Under the pieces are notes generated by a model. The model saw only the letters and a list, made by a program, of their open reading frames with translations. It made no database searches and was not told the DNA's origin. A DNA stretch of 64,000 bases from Podarcis cretensis. Its lineage: Eukaryota. The stretch spans positions 47,740,001 to 47,804,000 of the forward strand of contig OX638155.1 of the NCBI GenBank assembly GCA_951804945.1. The letters are read 5' to 3'. Both the position numbers and the translations under genes were made by a program. Shown here one piece after another: positions 3,850-17,095 of the stretch (its first letter is position 1; every line of letters starts with the position of its first letter).

Positions 3850-5009
3850 AGTAACACAGAAGCCTCTTTTCCTATACACCACAGTCTTGATCTGGATCAG
3901 GGTCATCTACAGCTCCTATTTAAAAATAAAATTAGAAATACACAAATGCAGGCATGCTTTTGCAGCACATTCCTGTAAATATTTACTCAGAAGTAAGTCC
4001 TCTTAAGTTCAGTGAAACTCCCATGTGCAAGGGCTATAGAACTGCACCCTCAATCTAGTGTTTGATTTGGCACAGAGTGAGGCCTTTTTGCTTGGAGAAA
4101 ATTGTTTATTTACTTGTCTAAGAAGCCTCCTGTTGGTAGTTTTCTGGAACATACTTGCCTTTTTCATGGACTGCCTAGAGTTATGTTGAGATGCAGAACA
4201 TGGAAAATAAGTACAACAACAACTGGAAGCATTTTCAAAATGTTCAGCAATGCTCAAAGTGTATCTGATAGGTCTAGACTTTAGACAGCTTGCTGTGTGG
4301 AAAGGAGTCTTAAAATAGCTTTCCTCCCAAAGAACATTCATGTCACTTTTATGGTAATGTGCCTCCACCAATCTAGCAAAAGATATAGGAATTATTAGTA
4401 CTGAATTCCACTTACATGGTAATGTGGCAAGGTCAGCAAAGATTCCCTGGAGAGTGGTTGTGATGGTAAGGTTTTCATAGCCCCAGGAGAATTACTGAGG
4501 AAGATAACAGATAGTCAACCTAGCAGGAACACATGCAAGATACTTACCCCCCAGAATTTCTATGTTTGGGGAAAATCAGGAGCATATCTCTGTCTCATGT
4601 GTACCTCCTCCATCATGAACTTAATACCTGAAATGGAACAGCCCACATTTATTTTAAAGTGGAATCTCCCTGTCTGTGTAATCCTGGCCTTGTTTTCATT
4701 AAGGGTCTGGATTGTGAAATCAGAGGGAGCTTCCACTCAAACAGATACTATCTCCTAGTTCAGGAGTTTTGCTCTGCAGATGGGGCTGGCGAAGGGATGG
4801 AGGGGGCAGACAGGTTCATCTCACCACAGGTAGACATTCCAAGTTAGAGTATTATATGAACCCTAAGTCTTTCTGGATTTTGGTCTTACAGTTTAAAAGG
4901 CAGAGAGTTCCTTTAGGCATACCTGTTGTCTAGCCCTCATCCAGCAGATGTCAATCATATAAAGGGTTCTAAGAAAATGGGTTTCAGGTGGATACGTTTG
5001 CCTTTACAG

Positions 5010-5062
5010 AGTGCCACTGTGAGGCATCTGGAACACTGAGTGGAGTCAGAGAGTGTCGGCAG
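5010..5062 (+). CDS. LAMA3: LAMA3 exon ~16 (ECHCEASGTLSGVRECRQ)
   Basis: acag|AG...CAG|gtaaaa, 53 nt, phase 1->0. Confidence 0.92.
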
Positions 5063-5653
5063 GTAAAAATATTCAGTTTTCACGTATGTGTTATTCAACT
5101 TTTTTGGCTGAATAAATCCATATCAAGCAGCAGCTCTCCCACTGGTCTACAGCCCCAAATGTGTGGGTGGGAAAGGACCTTGGCATCCCAATATTCTTTG
5201 TTTCTTGGGTGCAAGTATTGCGTTTTAGGCCCAATTTAAAACTTTGCTTTTCATCTTTCTGAGTCCTTTGTGACATGCATGAATGTCCCCTCTAGGTGAG
5301 GTACTACAAATGACAATGAGTGAAAAAGCCTTTTCAGTAGTGACTCCCTAGTTTGTGGAATGCCTTCCCCAGAGAGACCCACCTAGCATCTACCCTAATG
5401 TCTTTTCATTGCCAGGCAAACAGGATGACAACCTAGTTTTAGCTCAGTGAATTTTATTTCTCCACTCCCTCTTTTAAAACTGTTTTTTTTTTAATCCCTC
5501 TCTCTGTTTATCCCTTTCTCTACATTTTGATCTGCTGTGTTTTATTTGTTGGCTTATATTGTAATCTTTTTATTTTTGAATTTTTGGTCTACATTGTAAG
5601 CCTCCTGGAGAAGCTTTTTTATTAGGCAATCGAAAAATAGCCTACCTACCTAA

Positions 5654-6251: not shown

Positions 6252-6357
6252 GTGGATGGTGAATGTTACTGCAAGCCTAACGTTTGTGGAGATTCGTGTG
6301 ATACTTGTGAAGATGGTTATTATGGGCTAGAAGACAATAATTATTTTGGATGTCAAG
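6252..6357 (+). CDS. LAMA3: LAMA3 exon ~17 (VDGECYCKPNVCGDSCDTCEDGYYGLEDNNYFGCQ)
   Basis: atag|GTG...CAAG|gtacag, 106 nt, phase 0->1. Confidence 0.93.
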
Positions 6358-6626
6358 GTACAGTGTGGTTTAATTACTACAGGACATGTTTCTGAAAAAT
6401 ATAGTCTTCAAATCACTCCTACATAACATATTTGCATATGAACATTTATTATTGTTTCTTACCAATGTGAGCCTTCTGTTTAAATTTTGGTAAGTGACAG
6501 TGGGCAAGTTTTCAGTATTAAATATCTGCTTCCTTCAACACAGATCACTCTTTAAACTGATGGCCTTAAGCTGTGTTCACACTCCTGATTACTGCGCACT
6601 TACTGTGTTGCCAGTGCTGAGTTTTT

Positions 6627-6836: not shown

Positions 6837-7275
6837 GAAAACAGACTACTGTTTTAGTGATTCCCTGGTTATCTCATTTTGTTTATGCTACTCTTTCCCT
6901 TCAGAAACAGGGACTCATTCCAATAGTGACCTGCAGTAAAGCAGCCATAGCAATTGGGGCAATGTCAGTTCTTCCTCCTCTGCTCTTTCCTAGCTCTTGG
7001 TTGTGTGTGAGAGATGGAGAGATGACTTTGGATCTATACAGGTACTTTGTTGAGCATCTGCTGTGATGACTCTGGGGCTGTGCCAGCCCACTGCAGAAAG
7101 CCATACATATACATTTTTGAGAATTGATCTTGAGCATAAGCAATGCGGCACTAAAGTCATTTACAAAAAGGCAGAGAGTGTTCTTCCCATCTCTTTATCC
7201 CAGAAAACCTACAAATCTTTCTTCTGGCATCATATATTTTTGCTTTAAAAGTTTGGTTCTTTCCTTTACTCACAG

Positions 7276-7375
7276 GGTGCAAATGTGACGTGGGAGGGGC
7301 CATAAGCCGTGTGTGCGATGATCTGTCAGGTGATTGCCAGTGCAGAAGGCACATGGTTGGAAAATCCTGCAATGA
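7276..7375 (+). CDS. LAMA3: LAMA3 exon ~18 (GCKCDVGGAISRVCDDLSGDCQCRRHMVGKSCN)
   Basis: acag|GG...GA|gtaagt, 100 nt, phase 1->2. Confidence 0.93.
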
Positions 7376-7811
7376 GTAAGTAAGATGGAAAAGTGAAGCT
7401 TAGGCACCAGTAAATCCAATAATAATAATAATTTATTATTTATACACCGCCCATCTGGCTGGGTTTCCCCAGCCACTCTGGGTGGCTTCCAATCAAATAT
7501 TAAAAACACAATACAGCATCAAAACTTCCTTAAGATTTTGTGCTGATTCATCAACACTTGATTGGTAATCTGGGATTAACTAGATACTTTCAACAGTGGG
7601 TGCCAAGTTCTGTGAGGGCGCTCTTTGTGACTTCACCTTGGTAGTAGTATGGAGAGGATTCGTTTTGCCATCTCCCTCCTTAACTTCTGCCATTTGGTCT
7701 AATCCAGCAGGCCAATTCTTAAATGTTATGTCTCTTTTTCATATGTAGCAAATGAAACATTTTTAGAAAACAAAAGTATTGCCTTCCATTTCATTTTTAT
7801 ATTTATGAAAG

Positions 7812-7968
7812 GCCTGAAAAGGACTACTACTTACCTGATTTACATCACATGAAGTTTGAAGTTGAAGATGGTACATCTCCTAATGGAAGAGGAATCCGGT
7901 TTGGTTATGATCCTCAAGAATTTCCTGGCTTTAGCTGGCGAGGTTATGCACAGATGTCCTCAGTACAA
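7812..7968 (+). CDS. LAMA3: LAMA3 exon ~19 (start of L4a/LF; PEKDYYLPDLHHMKFEVEDG...FSWRGYAQMSSVQ)
   Basis: aaag|G...CAA|gtatgt, 157 nt, phase 2->0. Confidence 0.94.
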
Positions 7969-9757: not shown

Positions 9758-10999
9758 CAATTTGTGAGCATTACAGAAAAAATTGGAGGAATGTATTCAG
9801 TAAGTGCTGTCTTGGCATCTTTTTGGAGAATATGGTTTGTTTCATCACCTGATGCTTGTTCATCCTTGGGGACGCGTTCAGAGAGATTGTTGGAGTAGCA
9901 TCATATATAATGGATTCCTTCTGGTTAATCTTCATTCATTTGTATGCCTTACTCCTCTTAATCTAGGGCTTTCCCTTAGGGTTATTCTTTTAAATTCTGT
10001 TAACCGTGTCAGAATTTTACAAGGGTAAAATATAAATTTATGAACTACAACTTCTCCATTGCCATTTCCCCCTCTGCTTTTCCTTGCCTTCAAAAACAGA
10101 ACATGCTCTTAAGAAACCTGGATCAGCCCCCAGAAATGCCTAGTTAAGATGATCCAGAGAAGAACATTTTTGGCTGTTTTAGACTAATTTTAGATAGTAG
10201 AACAGCTCAGCATTTCCTGTTTTGTTCCCATTAAGTCAACTTCATTGTTGAAGCTTTTATTAGAGGAGGAAGGGAAGCAATGCTGACATCCCCACCCCAA
10301 ACCTCTCCCCTCCTTCTCCTTGCTGCAGTGATTCTGTAGTTGGCGGTCACCAATGAAAAACCAATAGGAGATGCATAGAAAAAGGGTGAGGAAGAATAAT
10401 CAAACCAAATAAGTTAAATAATGCATGGAACTCTAGGCATATGCCAGATGAACTTCAGTCATCTGGTTTCAAACCTTTCCATTGCATCGTTGACATCCAG
10501 TTGGATTCTCTAGGAAGTAGTTACTTGGCAACCCTAAAGTTAATACATGGAAAACCATCTCAAATGCCAAGTTAAAATAGATTGGAGAAGTGCAAGGTAC
10601 ATCATCCATGATTTAACATTAGCACACAGTTCTTATCCTTAAGCCATGCCACATGGACACCACAGTACTATGCCAGCTTAACAGAGCAATGATATGCATG
10701 TCTTCTCAGAAACACAGGAGCAAACAATACAGGTAAGTGTGTATAAGAGTGCAGCCGTAAAAATGCGGACCATAGTACAGCCAAAACTTGTTATCCTTCT
10801 GAATTCATCTGGACATCATTTACAGTGAGGATCAGTAAGAAGAGAACTGCTTTAGACCTGTGTTTCATCCAAACCCACCATAACTTTTTTGATTGCTGTG
10901 TTACATTTGCTAAATGTTTCTAGACATTTTCTGCCTTTTGGGTGGTAGTCTTAAAATAATATGCTTTCCTGTCCTCTTCTTTGCTTCTTTTTTCCCCAG

Positions 11000-11138
11000 C
11001 CAGAGGTGGTAGCACCTGTCACTGTGGCTTCTCCTAAGCTCTTCCACCTAGCACTGCACTATGTCACCTTGGTTTCAAAAAGCTGTAGAGGGAGGATCTC
11101 AATTGCTGAGGGGAAACATTTTGGCCCTAATAACACTT
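11000..11138 (+). CDS. LAMA3: Candidate alternative (mutually exclusive) exon 20a, LAMA5-like (PEVVAPVTVASPKLFHLALHYVTLVSKSCRGRISIAEGKHFGPNNT)
   Basis: Long polypyrimidine tract + cag|CCA...ACTT|gtaagt, 139 nt, open frame, phase 0->1 like exon 20b. Aligns without gaps to the recalled LAMA5 segment [22 protein letters not shown]...SGRVS. Expression not shown. Confidence 0.65.
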
Positions 11139-11362
11139 GTAAGTGAATTACGTTTCTTGCTAGGTTTGCCTATCTTTCTCTTCCTTATGCCAGAAAATGC
11201 TTTTCCTTCCGCATAAATGTCTCTGTCTATATGTGTGGTACTTGTTATTCTTATTTTCCCCCCTGTAGGAATTGTGTATTTTGCTTGCACAGCTTCTGAA
11301 GATTTATCCTTTTGGTACTTTATGGCTTTTTCCTCCTTGTTTATTTACCTCCCATTTTACAG

Positions 11363-11492
11363 AATGAAGTAAGGATAACTTTGAATGTGGAGAAATCAAA
11401 CCTCCGTTTATTTCGTGTTATCTTGAGGTATATTAATCCTGGAACTGCTGCGGTATCTGGCCACATAATCGCTTATTCTCGTCTTCGTAAAG
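11363..11492 (+). CDS. LAMA3: LAMA3 exon ~20 (20b, canonical; NEVRITLNVEKSNLRLFRVILRYINPGTAAVSGHIIAYSRLRK)
   Basis: ttacag|AAT...AAAG|gtaggt, 130 nt, phase 0->1; matches recalled human NDVRITLNVGKS..LFRVILRYVNPG. Confidence 0.93.
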
Positions 11493-13932: not shown

Positions 13933-14078
13933 TACATGGTTGGGTGGGCAGGGGGATGCACCTGCTCTTTCAGTTTGCTGCTTATCTCATTTTAATTAAT
14001 AAAAATGTTGGTTTCTGAGTCATCAGGGAGTGTGTGTGTTTTTTAAATTATTATTATTATTTTCTTGTTTGTTGGCAG

Positions 14079-14221
14079 GGACTCCTCAGAGCAAAGATGT
14101 TGTCTTCCCACCCAGTAAAGAACCTGCTTTTGTCACTGTCCCAGGGAAGAGCTTTGCAGATGCATTTTCACTGACTCCTGGAACCTGGATTTTTAAAATC
14201 ATGGCAGAGGGAGTCCTTTTG
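14079..14221 (+). CDS. LAMA3: LAMA3 exon ~21 (TPQSKDVVFPPSKEPAFVTVPG...AEGVLL)
   Basis: gcag|GG...TTG|gtaaga, 143 nt, phase 1->0. Confidence 0.94.
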
Positions 14222-16994: not shown

Positions 16995-17095
16995 GATTAC
17001 CTGGTGCTCTTGCCTAGCGACTACTATGAAGCCCCCATCCTGCAGTTACCAGTTACAGAGGCTTGCACATATTCAGGACAGGCAGTGACAGATAA
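16995..17095 (+). CDS. LAMA3: LAMA3 exon ~22 ([33 protein letters not shown])
   Basis: ttag|GAT...AA|gttagt, 101 nt, phase 0->2. Confidence 0.92.

What the first reader, a model, noticed from the sequence alone, without database searches (positions are those of the whole stretch)
11000..11492. Hidden LAMA5-like exon next to canonical exon 20: candidate ancient mutually exclusive exon pair in the alpha3B L4a/LF domain
Seen: 224 nt upstream of the normal exon (11363-11492) is a second 139-nt exon with a strong polypyrimidine tract + CAG, a consensus GTAAGT donor, an open frame and the same phases (0->1). It splices cleanly between exons 19 and 21 (...SSVQ-PEVVAPVTVASPKLFHLALHYV...GRISIAE...NNT-W-TPQSK). 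The two exons share the LF-x-[LV]-x-L-x-Y...G-x-I pattern. Against the human LAMA5 segment as I recall it ([46 protein letters not shown], 46 aa), it aligns without gaps with 15 of 46 identities. The downstream exon matches human LAMA3 instead. Inference: an old tandem exon duplication in which LAMA5 shows the a form, mammalian LAMA3 uses the b form, and this lizard keeps both, giving two switchable versions of a globular short-arm domain. I know of no description of this. The conserved RYVN motif has drifted to HYVT, so it could also be a decaying pseudo-exon.
Basis: partly seen in the sequence, partly recalled or inferred. Interest (0 to 1): 0.85.

Follow-up and report, generated by a model that had tools for sequence, protein, structure and literature searches.

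The report
Conserved alternative LAMA3 exon in lizards
Next to a normal exon of the lizard laminin alpha-3 gene lies a second, older-looking version of that exon, kept intact across lizards and geckos and spliced into RNA, so the gene probably makes two versions of one globular domain, although the decisive RNA junction could not be checked.

Summary
Window 11000-11138 is an open 139-nt exon. It has a strong acceptor, a GTAAGT donor and the same phases (0 to 1) as the canonical exon 11363-11492.

It is not a chance ORF or a decaying relic:
- It is intact in about 30 squamate sequences, including a Gekko kuhli gene model (83% amino-acid identity).
- In one distant relative (locus L001) it is a gap-free 85%-identical island in an otherwise unalignable intron.
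- Its amino-acid divergence matches the neighbouring exons, and its synonymous divergence is three times lower, as in regulated alternative exons.
- Assembled RNA contigs of relatives join exon 19 directly to it.

Profile comparison places it with the "a-type" exon of LAMA5-like and fish LAMA3-like genes (P 1e-12). It matches the canonical "b-type" more weakly (P 1e-5 to 4e-6). Both types occur in both gene lineages, so the tandem duplication probably predates the LAMA3/LAMA5 split.

Exactly one of the two exons must be included to keep the frame. Including both gives TAA at the junction.

An unproductive "poison exon" role therefore remains a live rival. I found no paper describing this exon pair.

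The parts
7812..7968 (+). Exon 19 (constitutive). It encodes the start of the LF-like beta-sandwich and ends in phase 0.
   Evidence: It is 77% identical to the gecko model and 70% to mammalian LAMA3. Against L001, pS is 0.68 and pN 0.10.
10939..10999 (+). Conserved intron flank upstream of 20a (polypyrimidine tract and acceptor). The alignable block between the window and L001 begins here.
   Evidence: blastn block 10939-11467. The 120 nt upstream of 20a are 66% identical, while the rest of intron 19 gives no blastn match.
11000..11138 (+). Exon 20a, the a-type (LAMA5-like) alternative exon. It is 139 nt, phase 0 to 1, and encodes 46 aa plus 1 nt.
11139..11362 (+). The 224-nt intron between the two alternative exons. 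It is partly conserved (69% in the first 70 nt, 64% in the rest, with indels).
11363..11492 (+). Exon 20b, the b-type canonical LAMA3 exon. It is 130 nt, phase 0 to 1.
   Evidence: It is 61-67% identical to mammalian LAMA3 fragments. pS is 0.35, below the constitutive exons.
14079..14221 (+). Exon 21, the common downstream exon (phase 1 to 0).

Best explanation
Exon 20a is a real, selectively maintained alternative coding exon of the laminin alpha-3 (alpha3B) gene.

Origin. It is the surviving 'a-type' copy of an ancient tandem exon duplication. The 'b-type' copy is the canonical exon 20b.

What it encodes. By a low-confidence model, both copies encode the same three beta-strands of the CBM35-like (LF-like) sandwich at the start of the large first globular insert of alpha3/alpha5 short arms.

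Frame rule. The exons are 139 and 130 nt, and the flanking exons demand 1 mod 3. A productive mRNA must therefore carry exactly one of them. Carrying both creates TAA at the 20a|20b junction, and carrying neither shifts the frame. These forms are presumably removed by nonsense-mediated decay.

Inferred consequence. Squamates can make alpha3B with either version of this domain segment. The choice is presumably set by regulators acting on the conserved exon and intron sequence.

Shown:
- exon anatomy and the frame rule;
- conservation;
- homology to a-type exons;
- the 19-to-20a splice in RNA of relatives.

Inferred:
- the 20a-to-21 splice;
- translation of the 20a form;
- regulation of the choice and decay of the unproductive forms.
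For: 1. Anatomy and frame rule.

2. Orthologues. A phmmer search and cluster look-ups give about 30 distinct squamate sequences. All are open, all have the same AG| and |GTAAG borders, and the only indel is an in-frame 3-aa deletion. Ascertainment favours open copies.

3. Orthologous DNA (L001).
- Introns are unalignable.
- 20a is 85% identical without gaps.
- 20a has pN 0.13, against 0.16 for exons 16-19 pooled.
- 20a has pS 0.22 against 0.63 (Fisher p 5.6e-5).
- 20b also has lowered pS, 0.35 (p 0.016). This fits both exons being regulated alternatives.

4. Gecko against the window. 20a is 83% identical, within the range of the neighbouring exons (59-89%).

5. RNA. P0021, P0022 and P0026 (Logan contigs) and the NCBI model KAL8182236.1 read exon 19 straight into 20a.

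6. Homology.
- The lizard 20a profile against a-type exons of other genes gives Prob 97.7, P 1.3e-12.
- Against b-type it gives P 1e-5 to 4e-6.
- The tree separates an a group (support 81/86) from a b group (82/88).
- Best hits in the window are reciprocal.

7. Hatje et al. 2017 (PMC5740500) report that most validated MXE clusters in their cross-species set have incompatible frames, and that exon-joining reads are common. Joint-inclusion transcripts therefore do not argue against an MXE pair.
Against: - No transcript or protein with 20a joined to exon 21 was seen.
- P0021, P0022 and the gecko model end exactly at the 3' end of 20a. This fits 20a+20b (TAA) as well as a contig or model break.
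- P0026 reads past that end into the retained downstream intron, so it does not bear on this point.
- Differences between the window and L001 in 20a fall evenly on codon positions (5, 9, 7). dN/dS is 0.52 and not significantly below 1 (p 0.19). The pairwise test alone does not prove protein-level selection.
- No RNA evidence was obtained from the window's own species.
- The length limits of the searches could only reveal short ORFs. This biases against seeing productive long transcripts and equally prevents confirming them.
Confidence: 0.58

Rival explanations
1. Regulated unproductive ('poison') exon. 20a is included together with 20b, the TAA at the junction triggers nonsense-mediated decay, and the exon serves to turn down alpha3B output in some tissues. 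Its coding look would be a leftover from its origin.
For: - Three 20a-containing products stop exactly after 20a, as expected for T+AA.
- Both splice sites of 20a are strong and the 224-nt intron is spliceable, so joint inclusion is the default outcome.
- Synonymous divergence is very low and there is no third-position excess. This points to nucleotide-level constraint.
Against: - A poison exon does not need an open frame. Yet the frame is open in every squamate sequence recovered, across sequences as divergent as gecko, the window species and L001, and the only indel is in frame.
- The a-type protein signature shared with LAMA5-like exons is still strong (P 1.3e-12). This requires protein-level selection over most of its history.
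- 20b also shows lowered pS, as expected if it too is alternative.
- The stop after 20a could instead be a contig end at a branch point.
Confidence: 0.28
2. Decaying pseudo-exon. It would be a relic copy that is no longer used and is only occasionally spliced as noise.
For: - R to H in the RYV motif and T for N in this species.
- No productive transcript was seen.
Against: - 20a is 85% identical without gaps where the surrounding intron is unalignable and synonymous sites of neighbouring exons are near saturation (pS 0.63).
- It is 83% amino-acid identical to the gecko.
- Splice sites are intact in all copies.
- H at that position is shared by many orthologues and by another a-type exon.
Confidence: 0.05
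3. Chance open frame with chance splice-like sites.
For: - BLASTP of 20a against 20b alone is weak (E 0.012).
- Pfam finds nothing.
Against: Orthologues, spliced contigs and profile homology.
Confidence: 0.01

Closest known systems
Mutually exclusive exon pairs born by tandem exon duplication and kept exclusive by frame incompatibility plus NMD (as catalogued for human by Hatje et al. 2017, PMC5740500)
   Same: - Two adjacent homologous exons lie in one intron.
- They have identical phases and lengths that are not multiples of three.
- Joint inclusion gives a premature stop.
- They encode the same structural segment.
   Different: - Exclusive, productive use is not demonstrated here.
- Neither LAMA3 nor LAMA5 occurs in that paper's text or its held supplements.
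- The intron between the exons (224 nt) is long enough to be spliced, so steric exclusion does not apply.
The a-type exon as seen in a non-human LAMA5-like transcript fragment (P0034), a fish LAMA3-like genomic ORF (P0030) and P0047 (organism not given)
   Same: - Same position after exon 19.
- Length of 45-49 aa.
- In P0034 and P0030 the read-through past the exon end reads C-K, as after the T|GTAAG donor of squamate 20a. This was inferred from protein only.
- The V-x-V-[AT]-[ST]-P-x-L-[FY] and G-x-[IV]-x-V pattern is clear in P0034 and P0047 and degenerate in P0030.
- hhalign P 1.3e-12.
   Different: - Whether those genes also carry a second, alternative copy is unknown.
- In squamate LAMA3 the a-type exon sits beside a b-type exon.
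Laminin beta LF domain (laminin IV type B; PDB 5LF2, Pulido et al. 2017, PMC5338690)
   Same: - Fragments of this alpha3/alpha5 region match 5LF2 (E 8e-15 for an invertebrate fragment, with stretch 11-191 reaching into the LF region). The profile alignment printed covers only the LE domain and the first residues of the insert.
- The paper states that the first ~200 residues of the ~580-residue alpha3/alpha5 insert are weakly LF-like and CBM35-like.
   Different: - The alpha3/alpha5 insert is far longer.
- No Pfam model hit it here.
- No function is known for it.
Poison exons coupled to NMD
   Same: - Inclusion together with 20b yields a premature stop.
- Nucleotide conservation is high, including at synonymous sites and in the flanking intron.
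   Different: - 20a holds no stop itself.
- It keeps a paralogue-like open frame.
- It is frame-compatible with both neighbouring exons on its own.
LaNt (laminin N-terminus) short isoforms of LAMA3/LAMA5 (Hamill et al. 2009, PMC2790989)
   Same: They are a known form of alternative processing in the 5' (alpha3B-specific) part of LAMA3.
   Different: - By my recollection, those isoforms arise by intron retention and early polyadenylation near exon 9, not by an exon choice inside the first globular insert.
- Only the abstract was seen.

Membership tests
Mutually exclusive exon pair (tandem-duplicated) | Two neighbouring exons within one intron of the constitutive exon chain | tested here: met
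   20a is 11000-11138 and 20b is 11363-11492, between exon 19 (ends 7968) and exon 21 (starts 14079)..
Mutually exclusive exon pair (tandem-duplicated) | The two exons are homologous | tested here: met
   BLASTP is weak (E 0.012). hhalign of profiles gives P 1e-5 to 4e-6, Prob 82-87%. The aligned motif is LF-x-[LV]-x-L-[RH]-Y-[VI] ... G-x-I.
Mutually exclusive exon pair (tandem-duplicated) | Each exon alone keeps the reading frame; both together or neither breaks it | tested here: met
   139 and 130 nt, both 1 mod 3. 20a|20b gives TAA. Skipping both shifts the frame. The same holds in L001 (139 and 133 nt).
Mutually exclusive exon pair (tandem-duplicated) | Each exon is found in mature mRNA joined to both the common upstream and downstream exons | tested here: inconclusive
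   19|20a is seen in P0021, P0022, P0026 and KAL8182236.1.
Mutually exclusive exon pair (tandem-duplicated) | Regulated (tissue or stage specific) choice | not testable with these tools
   No read-level data could be obtained.
Poison exon | Inclusion introduces a premature stop | tested here: inconclusive
   This is true only if 20b is also included (TAA). 20a alone is in frame. Products ending at the 20a 3' end fit this but also fit contig ends.
Poison exon | No selection for an open frame or for protein sequence | tested here: not met
   The frame is open in all ~30 squamate sequences. pN equals that of neighbouring exons. The a-type signature is retained.
a-type exon of the alpha3/alpha5 LF-like domain | Closer to a-type than to b-type exons by profile, tree and reciprocal best hit | tested here: met
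   Tree support is only moderate (81/86) on 48 columns.

The most novel reading that the evidence does not exclude
The a/b exon pair arose before the LAMA3/LAMA5 split and was an alternative pair in the ancestral alpha3/5 gene. Both genes would still carry or use both versions in various vertebrates:
- squamate LAMA3 has both;
- a fish LAMA3-like gene has a;
- a fish LAMA5-like model has b;
- another LAMA5-like transcript has a;
- possibly a decayed remnant is spliced in a mammal-like LAMA3 transcript.

If so, an overlooked, half-billion-year-old switch changes three strands of the LF-like sandwich of epithelial laminins. It would give the first experimental handle on a laminin short-arm domain with no known function.
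Probability: 0.3. Interest if true: 0.7.

Novelty: new member of a known kind. Interest (0 to 1): 0.52.

Why it matters
No function is known for the globular inserts of laminin short arms (PMC5338690). A conserved natural swap of three beta-strands in the alpha3B insert would mark a surface that evolution treats as tunable. It would also offer two natural variants to compare for binding, matrix assembly or proteolysis.

For annotation, squamate LAMA3 models that ignore 20a miss an isoform, and models that take both exons are truncated. For evolution, it adds a case in which paralogous genes seem to have fixed opposite members of an ancestral alternative exon pair.

Tried and rejected
Tools that gave no data:
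- Read laying. No junction reads were obtained.
The Logan contigs behind P0021, P0022 and P0026 could not be read, so what follows 20a in them is unknown.
- The look-up of sequencing runs. 17 runs hold 20a words but none is on record as RNA. Most look like DNA, so this says nothing about expression.

Searches that found nothing useful:
- Pfam on the exon peptides and on longer fragments found only LE domains.
- Papers: five searches and one supplement search found no description of a laminin alternative exon pair.
- A search for a third exon copy in the window found none.

Weak or insignificant results:
- The structure of a 333-aa invertebrate fragment had mean pLDDT 47. Only residues ~100-200 reached 60-80, showing the exon-20 equivalent as three strands. 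I did not search folds with it.
- A long-range RNA stem was considered (upstream intron about 10908-10925 with 20a about 11112-11128, and likewise L001 10114-10127 with 10315-10328). It is present in both minimum-energy folds, but the z-scores are -0.3 and -1.1 and only two sequences exist. It is not claimed.
- The alternative exon in P0032 scores only 3.5 bits against the a-type HMM, and 4 of 1000 shuffles do as well. It is a hint only.

Steps left out or to disclose:
All searches were exon by exon or used natural database proteins.
- P0043 looks to me like a human or primate genomic ORF of exon 19. It was fetched in a batch and left out of every comparison.
Nothing matched there. The file was deleted and later scripts worked beside those places.

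Full report
**Observation**

The + strand of the window carries a laminin alpha-3 type gene.
- Mammalian LAMA3 fragments (P0031, and P0040 named laminin subunit alpha-3 of Camelus dromedarius) map colinearly. P0031 maps to 7801-7968, 11357-11491, 14075-14212 and 16995-17078.
- The Gekko kuhli model KAL8182236.1 (P0024) maps to 4997-5068, 6252-6359, 7239-7376 and 7813-7968. It then maps to 10997-11137 rather than to 11363-11492.

Exon 20a is 11000-11138 (139 nt).
- An 89% pyrimidine tract and CAG precede it, and GTAAGT follows it.
- It is open in one frame only.
- Exon 20b is 11363-11492 (130 nt), 224 nt downstream.

Exon 19 ends at 7968 in phase 0 and exon 21 starts at 14079. Both alternative exons are 1 mod 3.
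- 20a|21 makes TGG.
- 20b|21 makes GGG.
- 20a|20b makes TAA.
- Skipping both exons shifts the frame.

**Is it more than a chance frame?**

Yes. A phmmer search of the 46-aa peptide against 1.84 billion representatives found two clusters of genomic ORFs at 69-74% identity.

Cluster look-ups and a profile search raised this to about 30 distinct sequences.
- All are open across 20a and have the same borders.
- In the genomic ORFs the residue before the exon is Q from CAG, and the read-through after it is C-K-stop from T|GTAAGTGA.
- The only indel is an in-frame loss of three residues (P0002).
- Ascertainment favours open copies, so this alone is not proof.

**Orthologous DNA**

A scan of metagenome contigs fetched a 62-kb JGI contig that is host DNA of a distant relative (L001).
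- In L001, 20a is 10202-10340 (139 nt) and 20b is 10532-10664 (133 nt), with the same splice sites and phases.
- blastn of L001 against the window aligns only exons and one block running from about 60 nt upstream of 20a to the end of 20b. The rest of the introns is unalignable.
- 20a is 85% identical without a gap. 20b is 74% identical. The intron between them is 64-69% identical, with indels.

Nei-Gojobori counts:

| Exon(s) | pS | pN | Fisher p for pS against pooled |
|---|---|---|---|
| 16-19 pooled | 0.63 | 0.16 | - |
| 20a | 0.22 | 0.13 | 5.6e-5 |
| 20b (37 codons) | 0.35 | 0.15 | 0.016 |

So 20a changes its protein as slowly as the real exons around it. Both 20a and 20b have suppressed synonymous change. 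From general knowledge, that is the usual mark of regulated alternative exons.

The flip side is that changes in 20a fall evenly on codon positions (5, 9, 7). dN/dS (0.52) is not significantly below 1. The pairwise codon test by itself therefore cannot separate protein-level from RNA-level constraint.

Against the gecko model, 20a is 83% identical in protein. Exons 16 to 19 are 59-89% identical.

**RNA**

- P0021 and P0022 (86 aa each, Logan contigs of 1.2 and 3.1 kb, two different species by their sequences) read from inside exon 19 straight into 20a.
- P0026 does the same and then runs into the intron after 20a.
- The gecko gene model does the same after three LE exons.

An exon-exon junction cannot come from genomic DNA, so 20a is used as an exon.

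P0021, P0022 and the gecko model end exactly at the last full codon of 20a. There are two readings of this.
- The next exon is 20b and the stop is the junction TAA.
- The contig or model ends at the exon border. A de Bruijn contig breaks there if several continuations exist.

The junction 20a to 21 is therefore untested. This is the main gap in the case.

**What kind of exon is it?**

A search with the exon 19 plus 20a part of the gecko protein returned natural fragments of related genes.

The segment after exon 19 falls into two forms.
- The a form is about 45-49 aa, has a V-x-V-[AT]-[ST]-P-x-L-[FY] motif (degenerate in P0030) and a longer tail. It is found in squamate 20a, a LAMA5-like transcript (P0034), a fish LAMA3-like genomic ORF where it follows exon 19 after a short intron (P0030), and P0047.
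- The b form has two extra residues near the start, R-Y-[IV]-N-[PA] and an A-Y...R-K-G end. It is found in squamate 20b, mammalian LAMA3 (P0031, P0033) and a Salvelinus 'alpha-5-like' model (P0049).

Invertebrate-like fragments (P0062-64) are intermediate.

Supporting tests:
- hhalign gives lizard 20a against the other a exons Prob 97.7, P 1.3e-12. Against b exons it gives P 1e-5 to 4e-6. a against b outside lizards gives P 7e-7.
- A maximum-likelihood tree on 48 columns separates a (81/86) from b (82/88), with the invertebrate rows as outgroup.
- In tblastn against all six frames of the window, every a exon hits 20a best and every b exon hits 20b best. No third copy appears.
- Trees of exon 19, and of the LE part plus exon 19, put the a-bearing P0034 and the b-bearing P0049 in one LAMA5-like group (87/90 and 90/90). 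That group is apart from the LAMA3 rows.

Both forms therefore occur in both gene lineages. The simplest history is a tandem duplication before the LAMA3/LAMA5 split, followed by differential retention or use. The organisms of several fragments are unknown and the alignments are short, so this is a moderately supported inference.

**Where it sits in the protein**

- The single-sequence match of P0062 spans residues 11-191. The profile alignment printed covers only the LE domain and the first residues of the insert.
- The paper on that structure states that the first insert of alpha3 and alpha5 is about 580 residues long and weakly LF-like in its first ~200 residues. It also says this part is predicted to have the same CBM35-like sandwich, and that no function is known (PMC5338690).
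- A low-confidence model of an invertebrate fragment (mean pLDDT 47, but 63-81 over residues 100-160) shows the exon-20 equivalent as three consecutive strands.

The exon choice would thus swap three strands of the sandwich. This fits the shared hydrophobic pattern of a and b.

**Mechanism and odds**

*Best reading (0.58): a maintained alternative coding exon used one-of-two with 20b.*
- The frame rule and decay of the joint form enforce exclusivity.
- Hatje et al. report that this is the common situation for validated pairs and that joining reads are usual.

*Rival (0.28): an unproductive exon that is included with 20b to lower alpha3B output.*
- It explains the strong sites, the RNA-level conservation and the three truncated products.
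- It does not explain why the frame and the a-type protein signature are kept, or why 20b also shows reduced synonymous change.

*A decaying relic (0.05) and a chance frame (0.01) are rejected by the conservation data.*

**Novelty**

Searches for LAMA3 or LAMA5 with mutually exclusive exons, for laminin with tandem exon duplication, and for alpha3B splicing found no description. The text and held supplements of the human MXE catalogue also hold nothing.

One deposited gecko model already contains the exon. Automatic isoforms in other squamate annotations may also contain it. The clustered protein libraries could not show this.

It is a new member of a well-known kind.

- One local blastn included them by oversight. 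It matched nothing there and the file was deleted.
- P0043, which I take for a human or primate ORF, was left out of all comparisons.
I did not test that.

Noticed in passing
window 10908-10925 and 11112-11128; L001 10114-10127 and 10315-10328: A segment of the intron about 90 nt upstream of 20a is complementary to the 3' part of 20a in both species (13 of 14 pairs in L001). It appears in both minimum-energy folds and would loop out the acceptor and most of the exon. The fold z-scores are not significant and only two sequences exist.
   Followed up: partly
protein P0032 (Logan, organism unknown, mammal-like LAMA3): This is a multi-exon transcript fragment in which exon 19 is spliced to a 33-aa segment that starts with P and is followed by a stop. 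The segment holds L-S-L-T-S-P-S-I-F, which resembles the a-type motif. It may be a decayed a-type exon still spliced in a mammal. The score is weak (3.5 bits; 4 of 1000 shuffles do as well).
   Followed up: partly
proteins P0020, P0027, P0028 (relatives of the L001 species): In one squamate lineage the frame stays open from 20a through the whole intervening intron into 20b. Retaining that intron would therefore be in frame.
   Followed up: no
protein P0040 (Camelus dromedarius LAMA3, partial model): The model goes from exon 19 directly to the D-Y-L-V-L-L-P segment, so it lacks exons 20b and 21. In the window 130 + 143 = 273 nt, so skipping both together is in frame. This may be a real isoform or an annotation artefact.
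   Followed up: no
window 11474-11492 and L001 10643-10664: The last 6-7 codons of the canonical exon 20b are poorly conserved and differ in length (130 against 133 nt). The first 37 codons are well conserved.
   Followed up: partly
proteins P0049 (Salvelinus 'alpha-5-like', b-type) and P0030/P0055 (fish LAMA3-like, a-type): Fish appear to use the opposite exon types from tetrapods in the two paralogous genes. Whether each fish gene holds both copies could not be checked.
   Followed up: partly
The stretch lies in intron 19 and was not studied.
   Followed up: no
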